DNA of 64,000 bases from Laetmonice hystrix. Taxonomy: Eukaryota. Shown piece after piece: positions 16,948 through 61,193 of the stretch (within the stretch, counting starts at the first letter, position 1; each line of letters begins with the position of its first letter). The DNA lies in the NCBI GenBank assembly GCA_965235115.1, contig OZ249436.1, forward strand, positions 57,784,001 through 57,848,000, in the 5' to 3' direction. Made by a program: the position numbers and the translations under genes. The notes below the pieces were generated by a model. The model ran no database searches, was not told the DNA's origin, and saw nothing but the letters and a program-made list of their open reading frames with translations.

Positions 16948-18239
16948 AGCCATCAATCGTGATTGATACCAACACTCAACATTTTAAAAACGATCGGTTC
17001 CTCTATATTATTGAGAAAGCGGCCTAACATAAAAGCAATTTTTTTAGACTGTTTTGAAGATTTACTGTAGTTTGTTTATGTTCAGTCGGAGGGTTTCGTG
17101 CCATAGCAGTTGCGACGTATATGTCGTCTTTCTTAGTTATGGGTCGCAGTTATGGTCTAGACATGATCTCAACAGTAAACAATGCACAATTTCTATTCCC
17201 TTCCTCTAAGTTCTAGTCGTTTGAGTCGGATAGCTTAAAAGGAATGTTATAGAATCTATACATTTAATCTGTACTTTGTATATAAGTAGACGCAGTACTG
17301 TTCATGCCGTATGTTTGTTTAGAGAAAAACCAGCATACTTGGCCTGTTGGTAATAGGAGGGATGTCTAGTATTGTGATAATAGCTGGAACCATGTGTGGC
17401 GCTTTGCATGCATTACTGGCAGTTTGTGTAGTTACCCCCACATGTATGGCAGGTGCTGGCCTGTAGACTCTGATTTCACCCTCATCTACACCAAATGTCT
17501 TGCAGTCAGGTATGTTATTGCAGAGGTCATGGTTCCGATGTACCTCAGCCGTAAAACAATTAACACCATATGTCGTAATCAGTCATTCCGGTCAACAACA
17601 CGCTCCCGCCGGCTGTAGGCATTTGTTTGTAGGTGCATTCCGGACGGTAGTTGGGTGTTCCGGCGTGTTCCTTTGACGAATTTGACTTCATCAAGCAAAC
17701 GCTGTTTAATAGTACCATCGGCCGCCATATACCGGGACATGTATTTCAAAGCTCCCGATATTGAGGTTGCGTTTTGTTCTATCGCGAGCAGACAGCATCC
17801 GTTTCTATACCCATAAAGTAGTTGAGACTAAAGGTATACTGTGACTTTCTTTTTAAGTCACCTAACTAACCACAGGTAGTGTATTCCTAGGTTAGTGTAT
17901 TGCAGCATAATTACAACTGATATGGAGTGTCGCTTTCTCGTTAAATTTAAATTATTCTATATTGAAATATAATTGGTACAATAGGCTCCAAAAATATGGA
18001 GGTAAATTATTTCTATGGGGTTTTTACTTGCATCTTAACCTATCACTGAATTTAGCATGAATTATTCAAAGGGATCAACGAGCCATTTTCATTGATTCTA
18101 CATTCACTATGTATTTCTAGAAAGTTAAAATAGATATTCATTAACATAAGAGTGAATAAAAATGACCAAAGGTAATCTGAATCCGATTAACATTAACCAA
18201 GGAGACACAAAGTAAGCAGTTCGGGTTCGTAGGTCGGTA

Positions 18240-20913: not shown

Positions 20914-21159
20914 ATGGTTCGAGCGCATCAGTATGGGAGTAATCTTGCTGAACTGCATCACTCTCGGTATGTACCAGCCCTGCAACGATGACGTATGCGA
21001 CACAATCCGCTGTCGAGTCCTTGAAGGTTTTGACCACTTCATCTTCGCCTTCTTTGCCATTGAAATGTGCATTAAGGTCACGGCAATGGGACTGATCGGC
21101 CGAGACACCTACCTGGCTGAGACTTGGAACCGTCTCGACATGTTCATCGTGTTAGCAGG
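20914..21159 (+). CDS. Cav3: Cav3 exon, domain I S1-S3 (246 nt, phase 2-2)
   Basis: Translates [82 protein letters not shown]; donor GG|GTAAGT at 21160. Confidence 0.96.
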
Positions 21160-36481: not shown

Positions 36482-36579
36482 TGCTGTGGAGTATGGAGTG
36501 GACAATGAAAACTTGAGTATCTCAGCCATACGAACCATTCGAGTATTGCGGCCACTTCGAGCTATTAATCGAATACCAA
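36482..36579 (+). CDS. Cav3: Cav3 exon, domain I S3-S4 linker and S4 voltage sensor (98 nt, phase 2-1)
   Basis: Acceptor TCTGTCTCTAG; translates (G)[32 protein letters not shown](S); donor A|GTAAGT at 36580. Confidence 0.96.
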
Positions 36580-37285: not shown

Positions 37286-37448
37286 NNNNNNNNNNNNNNN
37301 NNNNNNNNNNNNNNNNNNNNNNNNNNNNNNNNNNNNNNNNNNNNNNNNNNNNNNNNNNNNNNNNNNNNNNNNNNNNNNNNNNNNNNNNNNNNNNNNNNNN
37401 NNNNNNNNNNNNNNNNNNNNNNNNNNNNNNNNNNNNNNNNNNNNNNNN
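37286..37448. other. Assembly gap (163 N)
   Basis: Run of n. It is intronic, and the flanking exons join without missing conserved sequence (IP-S-MRIL). Confidence 0.99.
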
Positions 37449-39583
37449 TGTTTACTATGGACTACACAAATTCCTGCATAGTGTCAAAATTGTGGCGCCG
37501 GCCGGTTAGTGGAAACCGCCCTTAATGAAGAATTCTACTACATTGCTCTTACGCCGGTAAAATTCAGATTCAGATTTCATATTATATTGTATAACGTAGA
37601 TTAAGGCGGTGCACTGACTTGAAAAAGGTTTCATGAAGGTGAGAGCTGAAAGAACACCTACGAGATGTTGGTCAGATTGGTCGTATACGTCAGGGGGTTT
37701 GGTTGCCAGGTATGGGATGGAAGTACTGAAATGCGTGTCAAGGGCTGAAACTTATGATGAAGGCAACAAAGGTCAAAGAGGTATTGTAGAGGTGTGGTCT
37801 GGGTAGGGATTGGGGTGTGCAGGAGGTCCTCTCACAGGCCTGCCAGTGCAGGCTCCTAGTGTTCAGCTTAATGATGTAAAAGGTTAACAGAGTGAGAGAT
37901 GCCAGACGGCCCCAGCAATGGGAGCGAAGGCAATTGCTCCAAGGCACATTGGCAGCAGGACATCAGCACACACGCACGCCTTGTGCGGGTTGGTCCTTCA
38001 ACCCGAAATGTTAAACAAAGTAGGCCGCAAGGCTGTTCCAAATCCCTCGGCACCTTTGTCGCTCCCAATAGAGCAGGGTTGACAATGGCTTGCATGGATC
38101 GCATATAGAGTAATCTTTCGATTCTTAATTGCTAGTTCTGACCCGAAAATCGCGGAGTTAATGGGTAGTGAACACGGCTCTATCTGATCCTCGCGTGCCT
38201 TCCGATTCTGGTCACATTGAGATCATTTTCTCTACGTATTTGTCGGCGTACGGATAGTCGAGAGGGGCTGGAGCTGTAGTCTAACAGAAATATGTTAACA
38301 GGCCTCTTAAAATCTATTTATAACAAATTTTCCATAAATATTAATTACTACAGTGGTACACGGATATTCACCTCTACAACAGCTATATTTGATTATTATG
38401 CTTGATCATTTTTATACAAAATTTTACATAATTGCCAATGCCGGATAGAGGTGGAGTTGGTCTTTCCTTTAAAGTCGCCATACAGTTTACAATGGAGGCG
38501 GGTACGATTTGAAGAGGAAAGGTAATACATTATAGTTTATCTCTGTATTGTCATAAAGGCGCATGCAGTGGAACGGTTCCCAGTCTGAAATAGTAGCATC
38601 ATTGGGAGACCGTTTGTTACTGAGGTTATAACGGTCCCACGATGTGGCGGCTCAATCAACAATGGCTGATGAAAGATCATGATAAGGCCTTTGATAAATG
38701 TTCTTTTCACGATTTTAGAATTAGCCCGTGACATTTTCAAGGAGGGAGGCACCTGTAAACTCCAGCGTAATCAATGGTTATTGCTTTACTTTGTAACGTG
38801 ATAAATCTCTTGTTGATTTTCTTGTGGATTAGCAAAGATAAATATAGCTTTTCACTGACATTCTTAGGCAATCATGCCATTCTCAAACACAGTAGCAGAT
38901 GGATGTGGCATTGCCGGAGGTTAATTCAGCACTTATTGCTGATCATATGTCAGGTGGCAAGCCAGCTGATAAAATATTCATCAAATGCCTCAAGAAATGG
39001 GTGGTGCAGGGAAGCCTACCAGGTTTCTCTGCAAATGATTGGCTGATCAACCAACCGCCCCTTTTGATTGGCGAGTTCTGGCGCGTTTTCATCACAGGAC
39101 TGCCCAGGAACACTCGAGATTGCGAGAAAATATTACATCGTACTAAGATTATGCAAAGTACAATGCAAGGTTTCGCAGGTCCGAACAGGTACGGGTATAG
39201 ACTGTCGGGTGACATAACTTTGACTGAAATTTGCACTCATCTGTAAACGTACCTGTACAGACCACATGCATGGGACGTGTGGAGGCGTGTTTACCAGTAC
39301 ATGGAAACGTGTACAAAAAATATTTAAAAATATAAGTTATTAACTTATATTGTACCATCAAAACATACCTGTTGAATTCAAGTGTTTGTTTATATATAAA
39401 CCATGGTTGGATATAAGTGATAAATGAAATTAAACTGAGCACATTCTGCCTGCTCTATCCTAACTAACCTGCCCCAATGCACCTGTGTACCTAGAGCGTC
39501 GGAGGGACTCATAGCAAAACAACTCTGTCTGACGGAACCTGTACGGGTGGTCAGGTCGTGACCTTGCCTCCCAAAACATGACA

Positions 39584-42772: not shown

Positions 42773-42953
42773 GTATGCGAATCCTAGTCATGCTGCTCCT
42801 CGACACTCTGCCCATGCTGGGCAACGTCTTGCTGCTCTGCTTCTTCGTGTTCTTCATCTTTGGCATCATCGGCGTCCAACTATGGGCCGGACTGCTTCGC
42901 AATCGCTGCTTCCTCGACATACCCGAAAACATTTCCTACCCACCTGAATCTGT
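42773..42953 (+). CDS. Cav3: Cav3 exon, domain I S4-S5 linker, S5 and start of turret (181 nt, phase 1-2)
   Basis: Acceptor TTTTCAG; translates (S)[59 protein letters not shown](V); donor GT|GTAAGT at 42954. Confidence 0.95.
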
Positions 42954-49469: not shown

Positions 49470-49752
49470 TGTCCGCTTGTCTCAGCATTATATCCCAGCG
49501 GATCATAAAGACTTCATCTGCAGCCGGCCTGACGATGGCGGGATGATGCAGTGTAGTGACCTGCCGCTCTTCATACATAAAGGCATGACCTGCAATCAAA
49601 CGGCCATGCAATTTAGCAATAACACACCTACCAATGACTCGTGTGTCAACTGGAACCAGTATTACACCGATTGCAAAGCTGGGGTCAAGAACCCCTTTTT
49701 AGGGGCGATTTCTTTTGATAATATAGGACTAGCATGGGTAGCAATTTTTCAG
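49470..49752 (+). CDS. Cav3: Cav3 exon, domain I extracellular turret and pore helix (283 nt, phase 2-0)
   Basis: Acceptor ACAG at 49469; translates VRLSQHY...FICS...MMQCSDLP...CVNWNQYYTDC...NPFLGAISFDNIGLAWVAIFQ; donor CAG|GTAAGT at 49753. Confidence 0.94.
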
Positions 49753-52700: not shown

Positions 52701-55659
52701 TCTGTATACTCGATGGCTCCCTTAATGCCGCCCAATGTGACATTCAGTAACAAACATGTAAACTTGAAAAATGCTAATTTTAGTTTTTTAATGAGGTATT
52801 TTTACCATAGTTTGGACTTGTGAAGCCATATTTACAGCGTGTCCTTAATCTTGGTCCAGCAAACCTCAGGCAGGTAATCGTGGTAGAGGAAATCGGTAAT
52901 ATAGCAGGTAGACAGTGAGGGGCGATGTCTCCATGCGTCTACTATACATCATGCTGATATCTGCGCAGGTAAAGATGACGATTGTGGTCTGCCTAAACGT
53001 GCCCAAGCTCATGTGACGGTGATGAAAGGCAGGCTCACAGTCCTTTGATGTCCTCGTCAAATTATCACCGAGATAGTGAGGGTACGCATGGCACTGGCCA
53101 CGGGGTGGGTGAGAAAGGGTTACGAGGGCGGAAATGTCGGGTTCGATAAATCAGCCAGAAGGTAATGAGACAATTAATTAATTAATTAATCAGTTTAAGT
53201 GCAGAGTTGTACCGTATTGTACCAGTAGATGCAATTGAACTGTTTTGTATGTCTGATACCGAGTTACATTAAATATGACAAATGACTTGGCAAGTTTGTA
53301 CAGGAGATTTGATCTAACATGTCCATGTCATGATCCTATCTGCGTCGTTGTGACGTTGTACAGATTTACCGATACAAAAAGTACGGTATCTTGCCAGGAT
53401 GTGTACAACACTAACAAAAGAAAAAGGCAGAAGACAAGTAGAAATAATTTTCCTTAATGCACCAAATGCATAGATTGCCCCACGAAATCTGAAAGTTTCT
53501 GCCGATGTCGGTTAATTGACGCGAGTGACCGCCCTTTGTAATCGAGATGGTGGTGACCCCTACTGGTACCCGTATTAGACGAGATGACCCTGGGCATTCG
53601 TCTCGCCGCCGCACAAGACAGTGGGGTTTGCTTGGCCTTATGGGAGCTTGTCTAGGCAGTAGTCGGCTCCGTCTGTATGCTGGGTCAGCTCCAACACGAA
53701 GAAAACACCACACTGTTGGCTGTCCCTGCCGACCCCGACTATCGCTTTAATTAAGGGTTATCTGTGTGTGGATAGGACCAGCGATGGACAGTTGTCATTC
53801 CAGGCCACCAGGGGGAGCTATTGACGGCAGGGGCCGAGTTTATGGACCATGTGGGTGATGTCTAGACATCAGTGTCTTGGAAAGTCACGGGCTTTCTACA
53901 TTTTTCTAAAATCAGAAGTTCTAACCATATGGGTTAAATAATTTCGATAAGATCTCTGAAAGATTTGCCATTAAAAATTGCGATGGGAAATCACCGTGTA
54001 AGTAATCTTCTATAATTCTGTGTAAGTATAATATTGGTGCTTCGTTAAAACAGGGCCAGTGCATTATTTTGATGTGATGAGTAATTAGTCTTTTGATATT
54101 CAAAGAAATGCATCCATCCATATAAATCAATTTATATTTTCACGATATTAGTATGATTGTATCTGTAGACGATGGTGCCATCTGTATACTAATGATGATT
54201 TCTCTCTATCAAAGCAGTTTGATCCTTTTAAATAGTATATTAGTTAATATTATATGTACTTTCTATAATTCTTACAAAATGGTTTTAAGGCGACATTTGC
54301 ATGATTGGTATACCTTTTGGGCTGTAGAAGTACATTATGGCGTTTTGCATGGAGACATTTTGAAGAATTGTTTCATTTTTTTCTTGACGTGTTTTACACC
54401 CCATCAAGTGAACGTCATCTCATTGTATGGTGATTATGCCAGATCCAATCAAAACAAGCAAACATGTTTGAAATTGTGTATTTTGTGAATTGATGGAGTT
54501 ACTAATATTTGGAATAATAAGAGGGTTTTTTTTCTGTTGAACTTTCATCTGTTCCCTGGGAGCTTTGAAAGACATCGCCTGGTGTTGAGTTTAACGTTAG
54601 GATATGATCTTTGAGGTTGTCCTTATAAAAAAGGATAAGCGGTATATAATTATTGATAATGGCATGAATTGCTTTGTCCTACTGGATTTTTCGCTCATAA
54701 TTCGACGTTCATAATTTGTATGAACCTTCGATATATCTAAAGATATAAGGCGTGTTTAAGTCACTATAATAGCATTGCTATAAACAGGTAATCGTGCAGG
54801 CGCAATGCTCACACTGGCATGAAGACATGGAAACATCGCTTTTGCAGTTCTGAAATATAAGTTTCCTTTTTACCATTCTGAATTGAAATACACCTTCTTA
54901 TAGGTCTAAAATGAAAGGCTTTTTGATCTAAAGTTCTGAGATGAAAGTTACCCGGCATATGAACCTTTCACCAGAAGTAAGATGATGTTGTGATGTCATT
55001 AAGACTCATGTGGATAATGCAAAAGTTGTTTTTTTATTCCTCGTCCTTATCGTGGTGGTTCGATTTTAAGTTATATTTTTAAAAGAAATTTTGAGCCATT
55101 TTTTCCAGGATTTAGAAAGGTAAGCCACAGGCTAAACTTGACCTTGTGGGATTTTCGATTTTTCATCTTCTTTTTAACCACTCAATTTTGGTTTTACTAC
55201 ATATTTTTTCATTTTCAGTTTCCATTGGTCATTGACATGGTGTCCATTCATTGGGAAACAACTGAGTGTCAAACGTTCTGGTTTACTGTAAAAAACTAAA
55301 GAGAATCTAAACCCACACGGCTCTACTGTTTGACAAACTAAACTAAAAATAGAACACTTTAGAAACAGACAGGCAAGACCTGCATTTTATCGAAAGGAAT
55401 TATTTCTCATTTTGAGATGTTTTTAATTGAAATGGTTAGATTCGTTCCTCGGGAAGCCAGAGCTTAGGACAACTACTTCAGCACTGTTTTTCAATGATCC
55501 CTTTACAAAGTGAAGTGTATACTGACGTAGAGTACAATTGCATTACATGTATATAACATAATGTATACCTCGTTGACGATCGTAAACGCCACAGCCTCAG
55601 GCTGTAGCTAATGCGTTTTGACCCCCATTGAAATCCCCGCTTTCTTGTCTCTGTTTCAG

Positions 55660-55752
55660 GTTATCAGCCTTGAAGGTTGGGTAGATATCATGTATTATGT
55701 TCAGGATGCTCACTCTTTCTGGGATTGGGTATATTTTGTCGCACTTATTGTG
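55660..55752 (+). CDS. Cav3: Cav3 domain I pore-loop exon, copy A (canonical filter Glu; 93 nt, phase 0-0)
   Basis: Acceptor CTGTTTCAG; translates [31 protein letters not shown]; donor GTG|GTAAGT at 55753. Confidence 0.96.
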
Positions 55753-55814
55753 GTAAGTACCAAACATCTAGATGTTGATTTTTCATACATTTTATCTACT
55801 TTCCTATTTTTCAG

Positions 55815-55907
55815 GTGATAAGCCTAGCGGGCTGGGTAAATATAATGTATTATGTACAGGATACACACTCATTCTGGGATTGGATATATTTTGTTTCACT
55901 GATTGTG
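55815..55907 (+). CDS. Cav3: Cav3 domain I pore-loop exon, copy B (filter Glu replaced by Ala; 93 nt, phase 0-0); probable mutually exclusive alternative
   Basis: Acceptor TATTTTTCAG; translates [31 protein letters not shown]; donor GTG|GTAAGT at 55908. Same length and phase as copy A; 26/31 aa identical. Confidence 0.88.
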
Positions 55908-56670
55908 GTAAGTAAGGTCTCATGGCATGCCTCAACGCTGCATCCTGTTTTCCGAATCCCCAGTCTATATTACATGCGTATAACAGCACAATTAGAGAAC
56001 TGTAGATATAGCAGCATTCGAAATCGAACTCTGGAGCAATGGAGCGATGCTCGACGCTCTGGAGCAATCATTTCCCATTTGGTCATTTTCAAATCCAGCA
56101 GACGTGGCCCAAAGCCGTGTTGCATAACTTTTGTTTACTCAGTTTGAGTCCTCGACTGAGAGGAAATTCTGGGGGCTGGTGTTAGCTGGGCATCGCTTCA
56201 CAAGTTGTGCTCTAGTAGACGCCTCTTGGTTTGTGTTGTGGACTGTTTTGAATTGATGCACTTGCTGTGGTTTATCGTCTGCCAGTCCACCTTCCAACGT
56301 GCTTGTTCCTCTCCTTATTTGTGTTGCTTCTTTCTTTACGTTGTTATTTTGTTGCTGTTTTTCGTTTTGTTCTTCAGTGTTGTTAATTTCCTTTATTTTG
56401 TCACTAAACCTGCCCGAATCCACGCTCTGGTGGTTTTCTATATTTTGTTGCCTTTAATCCAAATTGCCTCTTTCAATGAGGTATCTAAAGTATGATTCTG
56501 CAAATTACTAAATCAAACACATGTTTATGAAAGTAACACTAACCGTCTGTAATTGTGAAATTCACAATCAAATGTTAATAGAAACCGCAGTTAAACCTTT
56601 TCAAACCATAGCCATATATCCTCTTTTAAACATTATAAAAGAAAAAAAGAAAAAAAGGGTGTTTAAATTA

Positions 56671-60203: not shown

Positions 60204-61005
60204 ATTGGGGCCTTTTTTATGATCAACCTATGCCTAGTTGTTATAGCAACACAATTTTCAGAAACTAAAAAGAGAGAGACAGAGAGAATGATGCAAGAAC
60301 GGAAACGTTTTCATTCTAGTAGTACTTTAGCGAGCAACTCTGAACCGGGAGGTTGTTACGATGAAATTTTGAAATATGTTGCACACTTATGGAGAAGAGC
60401 AAAAAGGAAAATTAACCGCCTCTGTCGCCGAGCCACAGGCCGACGGCAACGTAAAGTGACACCAGAGCGTGCAATATCTTTACGTAGAAAACGAAAGAAA
60501 AGGCGAAAAGGAGTACCACCGTCATCATTGTACCTTCAACCACCTCATCCTCATCAACAGCAATTCCATATTAGCAGCAATCCTAGCAATGCAGACAATC
60601 AAAACAGCCCCAAAGCACCGCGGGCGAGTCCCGAGGTATCCGACATAGACCCCATATCGTCGCCGCGCAGGCCAAACCATCTGATGGTGCCCGCTGGCGA
60701 GGACAGCGCCAACCCTTCGACTGAGTCCCTTCACATGGTGACCTACATGAACGAGTGCTTGGCGCCCCACGACCCCAACCTGTTGAAGTGTCCCATGCAG
60801 TCTTCCCCCAACCACATGGCGGCCAGCGGCGGCGCCATTTGTCGCCCCGTGAGTCGTACGTCGTCGTTCAACAGTCGTAGTAGTAGCAAGGACTGCCCGG
60901 TTCCGCCACCAGATGTCCTCGTAGCGCACGGTGCTAAGAATGCCAACAACTCGCAGCTGACTGCTGACTATGACAACAACAAACTGCATCCTCACGCACC
61001 TGAAG
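60204..61005 (+). CDS. Cav3: Cav3 exon, domain I S6, gating brake and proximal I-II linker (802 nt, phase 0-1)
   Basis: Acceptor TGTTTTTCAG; translates [29 protein letters not shown]...[31 protein letters not shown]...APRASPE...; donor G|GTCAGT at 61006 matches the phase-1 acceptor at 61193. Confidence 0.92.
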
Positions 61006-61193
61006 GTCAGTGGAAGGTCATTACTATAAGGGTAGAAGTTAAAAAGAAAGCAATGTAGCATAGACTCTACTATCTAGACCCTGATAGGCGTCACAATATA
61101 TATATATTTCAAGCATCGTATTCATATCAGTTCCATGTGCCTCAAAAAGTAAATTTATTAGGCCTAACAAAGAAATATTTTTTGTATTAAAAG

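What the first reader, a model, noticed from the sequence alone, without database searches (positions are those of the whole stretch)
55660..55907. Tandem duplicated pore exon swaps the domain I selectivity-filter glutamate of a T-type Ca channel for alanine (EEDD vs AEDD)
Seen: two 93-nt, phase 0-0 exons with intact acceptors and GTAAGT donors. Copy A reads [31 protein letters not shown] and copy B reads [31 protein letters not shown]. There are only 5 aa differences but 9 purely synonymous codon differences and no indels, the pattern of an old duplicate kept under purifying selection. Two changes remove acidic pore residues: the filter Glu (GAA to GCG, 55827-55829) and the Asp four residues later (GAT to AAT). 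Established: Cav3 filters are EEDD; neutralising filter glutamates in L-type channels weakens high-affinity Ca2+ block and lets monovalent ions through; invertebrate NALCN switches filter residues by mutually exclusive exons; invertebrate Cav3 is known to tune Na+/Ca2+ selectivity via the domain II turret (exon 12a/12b). I know of no report of a Cav3 exon pair that replaces a filter residue itself. Inference: one gene yields both a Ca2+-preferring and a Na+-permeable or non-selective low-voltage-activated channel. The other three filter residues are outside the window and are assumed to be E, D, D.
Basis: partly seen in the sequence, partly recalled or inferred. Interest (0 to 1): 0.93.

Follow-up and report, generated by a model that had tools for sequence, protein, structure and literature searches.

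The report
Alternative pore exons in worm T-type channel
An annelid T-type calcium-channel gene has two tandem versions of the exon that builds its domain I selectivity filter, one with the usual glutamate and one with alanine. Both have been kept intact across annelids, so these worms very probably make a so far undescribed "AEDD" low-voltage channel whose ion preference should differ from the classical EEDD form.

Summary
Two 93-nt, phase 0-0 exons (55660-55752, filter motif LEGWVD; 55815-55907, LAGWVN) lie 62 nt apart, each with AG/GTAAGT. They sit in the only Cav3 gene of a 627-Mb annelid genome. The Glu aligns with Cav3.1 E354. The other three filter residues, found downstream in the same genome, are E, D and D, so the isoforms are EEDD and AEDD.

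The pair is old and selected:
- Capitella teleta has the same E-then-A pair, with a 73-nt intron.
- 21 metagenome worm contigs carry the pair.
- At least 18 other contigs carry Cav3 genes whose only domain I pore exon is the Ala type.
- The Owenia gene model uses the Ala type.
- One annelid gene, a single 1916-codon exon, has the Ala type fixed.
- Between the window and Capitella, exon B shows 17 synonymous and 2 non-synonymous differences.
- A nemertean has a separate Gly/Glu pair.
- Molluscs and a leech have one exon.

No RNA data exist for this species, so mutually exclusive use is inferred, not shown. Lower Ca2+ selectivity of the Ala form is also an inference, from mutagenesis literature. 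I found no published report of this. I rate it a new variant of a known kind, of high interest.

The parts
20933..21159 (+). Cav3 exon encoding IS1 and the region up to IS2. The 5' boundary is approximate.
   Evidence: tblastn of Owenia, Capitella and oyster Cav3 proteins, 68-83% identity. GTAAGT donor after 21159.
36482..36579 (+). Cav3 exon (IS3-IS4 region)
   Evidence: tblastn. AG acceptor and GTAAGT donor.
42773..42953 (+). Cav3 exon (IS4-IS5)
   Evidence: tblastn, 85-93% identity. Splice sites.
49470..49752 (+). Cav3 exon encoding the cysteine-rich domain I S5-P turret and the start of pore helix P1. It ends ..AWVAIFQ in phase 0, with a GTAAGT donor.
55660..55752 (+). Exon A: domain I pore loop and start of IS6, with the canonical filter Glu (GAA at 55672-55674) and Asp at +4 (GAT at 55684-55686). 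It gives an EEDD channel.
   Evidence: Aligns to Cav3.1 residues 350-380, E354. Orthologous E-type exon in Capitella, Helobdella, Tubulanus and 21 metagenome contigs.
55753..55814 (+). 62-nt intron between the two alternative exons (GTAAGT ... pyrimidine tract ... CAG). It is probably too short for A to be spliced to B.
   Evidence: The equivalent intron is 73 nt in Capitella, 65 nt in Tubulanus and 78 nt in L033/L053, but 97-190 nt (one 679 nt) in other worm contigs.
55815..55907 (+). Exon B: alternative domain I pore loop with Ala at the filter position (GCG at 55827-55829) and Asn at +4 (AAT at 55839-55841). It gives an AEDD channel.
   Evidence: Orthologous Ala-type exon in Capitella (L025:17667-17759), the Owenia gene model P0175, the annelid gene P0209/L003 and at least 80 metagenome contigs. 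17 synonymous versus 2 non-synonymous differences against Capitella.
60204..61016 (+). Exon encoding IS6, the Cav3 gating-brake region and part of the I-II linker. Both alternative exons would join it in phase 0.
   Evidence: Best solved-structure matches are Cav3.2, Cav3.3 and Cav3.1, E 1e-25 to 1e-27.

Best explanation
The two exons are alternative, very probably mutually exclusive, versions of the domain I pore-loop exon of the single Cav3 (T-type) channel gene of an annelid.

Joining the upstream exon to A gives the classical EEDD filter. Joining it to B gives AEDD and also removes the Asp four residues further on. The tandem pair arose before the annelid lineages sampled here diverged, and selection has kept both copies intact.

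In some worm Cav3 genes the Ala-type exon is the only one present, so AEDD channels are a normal, functional channel type in annelids rather than a defect.

Inferred mechanism:
- In Cav3.1 the domain I Glu and the domain III Asp form the narrowest ring of the pore.
- Replacing the Glu with Ala removes one of the four filter carboxylates and widens that ring.
- This should weaken high-affinity Ca2+ binding and Ca2+ block of monovalent current. The B isoform should therefore pass relatively more Na+ at low voltages, and may also gate differently.
- The 62-nt intron probably prevents A-to-B splicing, so each mRNA carries one copy.

What is shown: gene identity, filter position, E/D/D at the other three positions, conservation and purifying selection of both exons, and the existence of Ala-only genes.

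What is inferred: alternative use in this species (about 0.85), and lower Ca2+ selectivity of the Ala form (about 0.55-0.6).
For: - Identity and filter position.
- E, D, D in domains II-IV of the same gene.
- Single gene, two copies of the exon.
- Capitella teleta has the same pair, E-type then Ala-type, both with AG/GTGAGT and a 73-nt intron.
- 21 metagenome contigs carry the E-type exon followed by the Ala-type exon, all with AG/GTAAGT.
- At least 18 contigs have upstream exon, Ala-type exon and usually the downstream exon, with no E-type exon.
- The Owenia gene model carries the Ala type with E, D, D elsewhere.
- P0209/L003 is an annelid Cav3 gene in which 1916 codons form one exon, with the Ala type fixed. 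This implies a spliced mRNA that held B without A.
- Purifying selection: window B versus Capitella B shows 17 synonymous and 2 non-synonymous differences. Window A versus Capitella A shows 13 and 3.
- Conservation stops at the exon borders.
- The window species sits inside Annelida, with Owenia as sister.
- The nemertean Tubulanus has a separate tandem pair, Gly-type then Glu-type, with 8 synonymous and 2 non-synonymous differences. This is a second case of a neutralised filter Glu.
- Literature for the mechanism: E354 and D1463 form the 2-angstrom constriction, and neutralising one pore Asp (Cav3.2 D975N) raises Na+ current 6.5-fold (PMC7382465). A domain I E-to-D change alters gating (bioRxiv 10.1101/626069).
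Against: - No RNA run exists for this species, and no transcript-derived protein fragment with the Ala exon turned up. Junction use, tissue pattern and exclusivity are therefore unobserved.
- Including both exons would keep the reading frame, so nonsense-mediated decay would not remove such transcripts.
- The A-B intron is 97-190 nt (one 679 nt) in many worm contigs, so steric exclusion cannot be the universal mechanism.
- No E-to-A mutant at domain I of a Cav3 channel was found in the literature, so the selectivity prediction rests on analogy.
- The taxon of the metagenome contigs could not be fixed from the few exons they hold.
- The metagenome hits were found with a pattern that demands AGWVNIMY, so conservation of those eight residues among them is by ascertainment.
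Confidence: 0.7

Rival explanations
1. Both exons are used alternatively, but the Ala form mainly changes gating kinetics, proton or divalent-metal block, or toxin and drug sensitivity. The Na+/Ca2+ preference stays much the same, because the remaining E, D, D and the domain II +1 Asp suffice for selectivity.
For: A conservative E-to-D change at the domain I filter position of Cav3.1 already slows activation, speeds inactivation and slows recovery (bioRxiv 10.1101/626069). From my own knowledge of L-type channels, the domain I glutamate contributes least of the four to Ca2+ affinity. Mollusc channels that lack the +4 Asp are still T-type channels.
Against: E354 is one of the two residues that form the narrowest ring (PMC7382465). 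Neutralising a single neighbouring pore carboxylate (D975N) already turns Cav3.2 into a largely Na+-passing channel. Exon B removes two acidic residues and adds none.
Confidence: 0.2
2. In this species exon B is a conserved-looking but unused or rarely used relic, or the AEDD product is non-conducting and acts only as a regulator of the A isoform.
For: There is no transcript evidence in this species. The Capitella, Helobdella and Tubulanus gene models use the Glu exon only.
Against: Synonymous sites are saturated while only 2 of about 74 non-synonymous sites differ between window B and Capitella B. Splice sites are intact in every species. Introns beside the exon are unalignable. Ala-only genes, and a 1916-codon open gene with the Ala exon, would be dead genes under this view.
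Confidence: 0.06
3. Both exons are included together, giving a channel with a duplicated domain I pore loop.
For: Each exon is 93 nt, so double inclusion keeps the reading frame.
Against: A 62-nt intron leaves very little room between donor and branch point. No known four-domain channel has a doubled P-loop. The Owenia model, the single-exon gene P0209 and the Ala-only genes each carry exactly one copy. The only database proteins with two copies are low-quality barnacle and salmon models with identical repeats.
Confidence: 0.02

Closest known systems
NALCN exons 15a/15b (and the domain III pair) in invertebrates: mutually exclusive exons that swap a selectivity-filter residue (EEEE versus EKEE/EEKE) (PMC3557258, PMC4436565)
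   Same: A four-domain channel with tandem alternative exons that encode the pore loop. The residue that differs is the filter (high-field-strength) residue itself. Found in lophotrochozoans, including annelids.
   Different: It is a different gene family (a leak channel, not a voltage-gated T-type channel). The swap is in domain II or III, not domain I. It introduces a positive Lys, whereas here a carboxylate is simply removed (Ala, or Gly in the nemertean).
Cav3 exons 12a/12b of protostomes (domain II S5-P turret), which make Lymnaea Cav3 mostly Na+- or more Ca2+-passing (PMC5379919, PMC7382465, PMC9694082)
   Same: The same gene family, with the same presumed outcome: tuning the Na+/Ca2+ preference of a low-voltage channel by mutually exclusive pore exons. 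This annelid gene also has both a 12a-type (CxxC...C) and a 12b-type turret exon.
   Different: Exons 12a/12b lie outside the filter and leave EEDD untouched. The pair described here is in domain I and replaces a filter residue. The cited reviews and papers do not list it among Cav3 splice sites.
Engineered pore-charge neutralisations: Cav3.2 D975N (PMC7382465), Cav3.1 DEDD/EDDD (bioRxiv 10.1101/626069), and, from my own knowledge, L-type EEEE glutamate substitutions
   Same: Loss or change of a single pore carboxylate alters Na+ passage, Ca2+ block and gating. These are the basis for predicting what exon B does.
   Different: They are laboratory mutants at other positions or with conservative changes. 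I found no natural or engineered Glu-to-Ala at domain I of a Cav3 channel.
Sodium-channel filters with an alanine: Nav1 DEKA and Nav2 DEEA (PMC4436565, PMC6259924)
   Same: Four-domain channels that function with an uncharged Ala in the filter ring.
   Different: The Ala is in domain IV. In Nav1 it goes with a Lys, which is the main Na+-selectivity determinant. AEDD has no Lys.
Tandem alternative pore exons in a BK-like potassium-channel gene of the same genome
   Same: The same genome and the same design: two close tandem versions of the pore exon, both conserved.
   Different: An unrelated channel family. I did not re-examine it.

Membership tests
Cav3 (T-type) voltage-gated calcium channel | Closest sequence relatives among solved structures are Cav3.1-3.3, not Cav1/2, Nav or NALCN | tested here: met
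   Exon A: Cav3.1/3.2/3.3 at E 2e-10 to 8e-10, against 1e-6 or weaker for Cav1. Downstream exon: Cav3.2/3.3/3.1 at E 1e-25 to 1e-27, against 4e-3 for Nav1.5.
Cav3 (T-type) voltage-gated calcium channel | I-II linker with the Cav3 gating-brake region directly after IS6 | tested here: met
   Residues 1-87 of the exon starting at 60204 align to Cav3.2 residues 448-535. This is sequence-level evidence only; I made no structure prediction.
Cav3 (T-type) voltage-gated calcium channel | Phylogenetic placement among Cav3 orthologues | tested here: met
   A 1432-residue concatenate of the gene's exons groups with annelid Cav3 proteins, SH-aLRT 96.
Cav3 (T-type) voltage-gated calcium channel | EEDD selectivity filter, said to be common to all Cav3 channels (PMC5379919) | tested here: met
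   Met with exon A: E plus DII E, DIII D, DIV D. With exon B the filter is AEDD. That isoform departs from this defining feature, and this departure is the finding.
Mutually exclusive tandem-duplicated exons | Adjacent homologous exons of equal length and phase, each with its own splice sites | tested here: met
   93 nt each, phase 0-0, CAG/GTAAGT at both, 83% nucleotide identity, 62 nt apart.
Mutually exclusive tandem-duplicated exons | Both copies conserved as coding sequence in other species | tested here: met
   Capitella. 21 metagenome contigs. Synonymous sites saturated with 2-3 non-synonymous differences per exon. Introns not conserved.
Mutually exclusive tandem-duplicated exons | Mature transcripts carry exactly one of the two copies | tested here: inconclusive
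   No RNA run is available for this species, and no transcript-derived fragment was found. The indirect evidence is the Owenia model with B only, the Capitella model with A only, and the single-exon annelid gene P0209 with B only.
Mutually exclusive tandem-duplicated exons | A mechanism that prevents joining of the two copies (for example an intron too short to splice) | tested here: inconclusive
   The intron is 62 nt here and 65-78 nt in Capitella, Tubulanus and L033/L053. It is 97-190 nt (one 679 nt) in other worm contigs. Intron-exon base pairing is no better than for shuffled introns.
Selectivity-filter switching by alternative exons (the NALCN 15a/15b type) | The alternative exons differ at the filter residue itself | tested here: met
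   GAA (Glu) versus GCG (Ala) at the position that aligns to Cav3.1 E354.
Selectivity-filter switching by alternative exons (the NALCN 15a/15b type) | The switch introduces a lysine, giving a sodium-channel-like ring | tested here: not met
   Exon B has Ala and no new basic residue. It works like the NALCN switch in design, but it is neither the same gene nor the same chemistry.

The most novel reading that the evidence does not exclude
Annelids have a so far unrecognised class of low-voltage-activated four-domain channels with an AEDD filter. These are made both by alternative splicing of the Cav3 gene and by dedicated Ala-only Cav3 paralogues, and they conduct mainly Na+ or are non-selective. 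Nemerteans reached a similar state separately, with a Gly-type exon (GEDD). If so, EEDD is not universal in Cav3, and removing the domain I glutamate is a recurrent natural route from a calcium channel to a sodium or cation channel.
Probability: 0.5. Interest if true: 0.88.

Novelty: new variant of a known kind. Interest (0 to 1): 0.82.

Why it matters
EEDD is treated as the signature of every T-type channel (PMC5379919). The only known natural way these channels change their Na+/Ca2+ preference is through extracellular turrets outside the filter. Here a whole phylum appears to switch the filter residue itself.

- It is a ready-made natural experiment on the role of the domain I glutamate, which together with the domain III aspartate forms the narrowest part of the Cav3 pore.
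- The predictions can be tested directly by expressing two isoforms that differ in five residues.
- It adds a third example, after NALCN and Cav3 exon 12, of lophotrochozoans using mutually exclusive pore exons to obtain calcium-type and sodium-type channels from one gene.
- It shows that gene models which pick one copy at random (Owenia the Ala type, Capitella the Glu type) hide this diversity.

Tried and rejected
- **RNA evidence.** Two searches for sequencing runs, one with the 6-kb stretch and one with the 777-nt exon, returned only three DNA runs of one sample. Junction use could not be measured. Laying those runs only confirmed the DNA.
- **Transcript-derived fragments.** A search for protein fragments of 110-350 aa spanning the exon junctions found many arthropod, vertebrate and rotifer fragments, but none with the Ala exon.
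- **Mollusc ESWVN motif.** At first it looked like a second alternative exon. All RefSeq isoforms of seven mollusc species carry it, and the Lymnaea locus has a single exon. It is constitutive in molluscs, not an alternative.
- **Owenia genomic DNA.** Not obtainable: the gene spans 114.6 kb and the record is marked withheld. Whether Owenia also has the Glu exon is unknown. The oyster protein was not on record, and the Pomacea look-up was not sent.
- **P0209 as a plain retrogene.** Softened. The 1916 codons are one exon, but an acceptor-like site and in-frame Cav3 N-terminal sequence lie just upstream, and there is no poly(A) tail. It is an intron-loss or retro-derived gene that still has at least one 5' intron.
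- **RNA structure competing for the exons.** A 15-nt intron segment pairs with the VDIMY/VNIMY codons of both exons. Helix scores across 23 loci were no better than for shuffled introns, z about 0. Dropped.
- **Exon tree.** With 87 columns it is unresolved at the base. It cannot show that all annelid Ala exons are one clade. That rests on the shared GCN and AAY codons and the shared exon order.
- **Host of the metagenome contigs.** Best-hit scoring against annelid, mollusc and nemertean proteins gave near ties; 61 of 80 were best to annelids. I call them worm-like lophotrochozoan contigs, most likely annelid. My recollection that these JGI samples are gutless marine oligochaetes is unverified.
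- **Barnacle and salmon proteins with two copies of the exon.** These are low-quality models with identical repeats, not alternative exons.

Full report
**1. The observation**

The sequence is as described. Exon A (55660-55752) and exon B (55815-55907) are each 93 nt, in phase 0-0, preceded by CAG and followed by GTAAGT. A 62-nt intron separates them.

They differ at 16 of 93 nucleotides. Nine codons differ only synonymously and five change the amino acid: Glu to Ala (GAA to GCG), Asp to Asn four residues later, Ala to Thr, Val to Ile, and Ala to Ser.

The upstream exon ends at 49752 and the downstream exon starts at 60204, both in phase 0. The joined reading matches the uninterrupted sequence of annelid Cav3 proteins. 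Contigs of three DNA runs from one sample reproduce 54800-56665 with no change in either exon.

**2. What gene it is**

- Exon A aligns over its whole length with human Cav3.1 residues 350-380, Cav3.2 and Cav3.3. Matches to L-type channels are much weaker.
- The downstream exon (IS6 plus the start of the I-II linker) matches Cav3.2, Cav3.3 and Cav3.1 at E 1e-25 to 1e-27.
- The Glu of exon A falls on Cav3.1 E354. PMC7382465 names this as the domain I filter residue which, with D1463, forms the 2-angstrom constriction.
- The window holds the 5' part of the gene. The rest runs about 45 kb further on the same chromosome.
- There I found the other three filter motifs: TQEDW, SKDGW and TGDNW.
- The 627-Mb genome has no other copy of this exon.
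- A concatenate of the gene's exons groups with annelid Cav3 proteins, with Owenia as sister, so the window comes from an annelid.

**3. Relatives**

This is where the evidence became strong.

- *Capitella teleta.* Its Cav3 locus has the same arrangement: a Glu-type exon (L025:17501-17593), a 73-nt intron, and an Ala-type exon (17667-17759) that also has Asn at +4. Both carry AG/GTGAGT. Its gene model uses only the Glu exon.
- *Owenia fusiformis.* Its gene model uses an Ala-type exon that differs from the window's exon B at one residue, with E, D, D in the other domains. Its DNA could not be read.
- *Metagenome contigs.* A scan with a pattern for AGWVNIMY hit at least 120 contigs, of which 80 were fetched. 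Nearly every hit is a 93-nt exon with AG and GT at its borders; two are broken copies that lack a donor.
  - 21 contigs have a Glu-type exon 78 to 190 nt (once 679 nt) upstream of the Ala-type exon, all with AG/GTAAGT.
  - At least 18 contigs show the upstream turret exon, the Ala-type exon and usually the downstream exon, with no Glu-type exon or remnant between. These are Cav3 genes in which Ala is the only option.
- *Protein P0209.* This annelid Cav3 has 1916 codons, from IS1 to past IVS6, in one uninterrupted exon (L003:2001-7751). It has the Ala type fixed and E, D, D elsewhere. Intron loss on that scale implies copying from a spliced mRNA that held exon B and not exon A. The long open frame implies that the product is used.
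- *Single-exon taxa.* The leech Helobdella has only the Glu exon. Lymnaea has a single exon. All RefSeq isoforms of seven mollusc species carry one constitutive version with Glu-Ser and Asn.
- *Tubulanus polymorphus (a nemertean).* It has a tandem pair in the opposite order: a Gly-type exon (L027:39181-39273), a 65-nt intron, and a Glu-type exon (39339-39431). They show 8 synonymous and 2 non-synonymous differences, one of which is the filter residue. On the exon tree the two Tubulanus copies are sisters (96/91). The pair is therefore either an independent duplication or one homogenised by gene conversion. Either way it is a second case of a neutralised domain I glutamate.

**4. Selection**

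| Comparison | Synonymous differences | Non-synonymous differences |
|---|---|---|
| Window exon B vs Capitella exon B | 17 of about 18.7 sites | 2 of about 74 sites |
| Window exon A vs Capitella exon A | 13 | 3 |

The same holds when the eight codons fixed by the search pattern are left out.

An alignment of the window, Capitella and the nearest metagenome contig shows conservation confined to the two exons and their splice sites. The introns are unalignable. An unused exon would not survive in this state over such distances.

**5. How it most likely works**

*Alternative use* is inferred from several points:
- the equal length and phase of the two exons;
- the separate splice sites;
- the gene models and genes that carry exactly one copy;
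- the short intron.

With 62 nt between donor and acceptor, and a pyrimidine tract filling the last 25 nt or so, the branch point can lie only some 30-45 nt from the donor of exon A. That distance blocks splicing in the classical steric cases (my own knowledge of alpha-tropomyosin exons 2/3).

The intron is equally short in Capitella, Tubulanus and two metagenome worms, but longer in others. Steric exclusion is therefore plausible here but not general. A test for competing RNA pairing gave nothing above shuffled controls.

*The effect on the channel* is also inferred:
- The Ala form loses one of the four filter carboxylates at the narrowest ring, and loses the +4 Asp as well.
- Neutralising one neighbouring pore Asp in Cav3.2 (D975N) raises the Na+ current 6.5-fold (PMC7382465).
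- Even a Glu-to-Asp change at this very position alters Cav3.1 gating (bioRxiv 10.1101/626069).

I therefore expect weaker Ca2+ binding and block, more Na+ passage, and possibly changed kinetics.

The same gene also has the known 12a-type and 12b-type domain II turret exons. Four pore combinations are therefore possible. The single-exon gene P0209 and the Owenia model both combine the Ala exon with a 12b-type turret.

**6. Comparison with what is known**

In design it works like the NALCN 15a/15b filter switch of lophotrochozoans, and in purpose like Cav3 exons 12a/12b (PMC3557258, PMC4436565, PMC5379919).

It is a member of the Cav3 family by every test except one: the B isoform does not have the EEDD filter that the literature calls common to all Cav3 channels.

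Searches for AEDD or GEDD with T-type channels, for annelid Cav3 splicing and for domain I filter exons found no report. The reviews list only exons 8b, 12a/12b, 25c and 26 as Cav3 splice sites. The library lacks most subscription journals, so a report could have been missed.

**7. Verdict**

- The physiological part remains a well-founded prediction.
- It is a new variant of a known kind, namely selectivity tuning by mutually exclusive pore exons.
- It would surprise specialists, because it breaks the supposed universality of EEDD, and it can be tested at once by expression.

Noticed in passing
G000:C1:57859300-57864900 (locus L149, about nt 1142-1330 and 2700-2930), downstream of the window: The same gene carries both a short tri-cysteine (CxxC...C) exon 12a-type and a longer exon 12b-type domain II turret exon. 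The known protostome Cav3 splice pair is therefore present alongside the new domain I pair. The 12b-type copy has three cysteines rather than the usual five.
   Followed up: partly
L003:2001-7751 (ENA ERZ22147071, contig ctg30217l): An annelid Cav3 gene whose 1916 codons from IS1 to past IVS6 form one exon, where the window gene has more than 20 exons. An acceptor-like CTCCAG and in-frame N-terminal Cav3 sequence lie just upstream, and there is no poly(A) tail. It looks like large-scale intron loss through a cDNA intermediate.
   Followed up: partly
L027:39181-39431 (Tubulanus polymorphus, OZ123229.1): A nemertean Cav3 gene with a tandem Gly-type and Glu-type domain I pore exon pair, in the opposite order to the annelids. 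The RefSeq model uses the Glu exon only. The Gly/Glu difference is a single base (GGA/GAA).
   Followed up: partly
L030, L031, L032, L072, L075, L076, L084, L090-L092, L097, L100 and others (metagenome contigs): Several distinct Ala-only Cav3 loci occur in the same metagenome samples as the loci with the Glu/Ala pair. This suggests that these worms have multiple Cav3 paralogues, whereas most invertebrates have one.
   Followed up: partly
L069 (minus strand, exon copies at about 841 and 933 of the reverse complement): A truncated second copy of the Ala-type exon, without a donor site and with a broken 3' end, lies directly upstream of the intact one. It looks like a decaying extra duplicate.
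   Followed up: no
L028:34632-34724 (Lymnaea stagnalis) and protein P0015: The Lymnaea domain I pore exon reads ESWVI..H where other molluscs, including other pulmonates, read ESWVN..Y/F. The locus has only this one copy.
   Followed up: partly
proteins P0148, P0151, P0155: Database gene models that mishandle this exon. One model skips it, and the barnacle and salmon models repeat it identically. These look like annotation or assembly artefacts.
   Followed up: no
window 37286-37448: A run of 163 N inside the intron between the exons at 36482-36579 and 42773-42953.
   Followed up: no
same genome, another piece (earlier finding s1-322021): The scan has already noted tandem alternative pore exons in a BK-like potassium-channel gene of this genome. 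Pore-exon duplication may be a recurrent theme in this animal.
   Followed up: no
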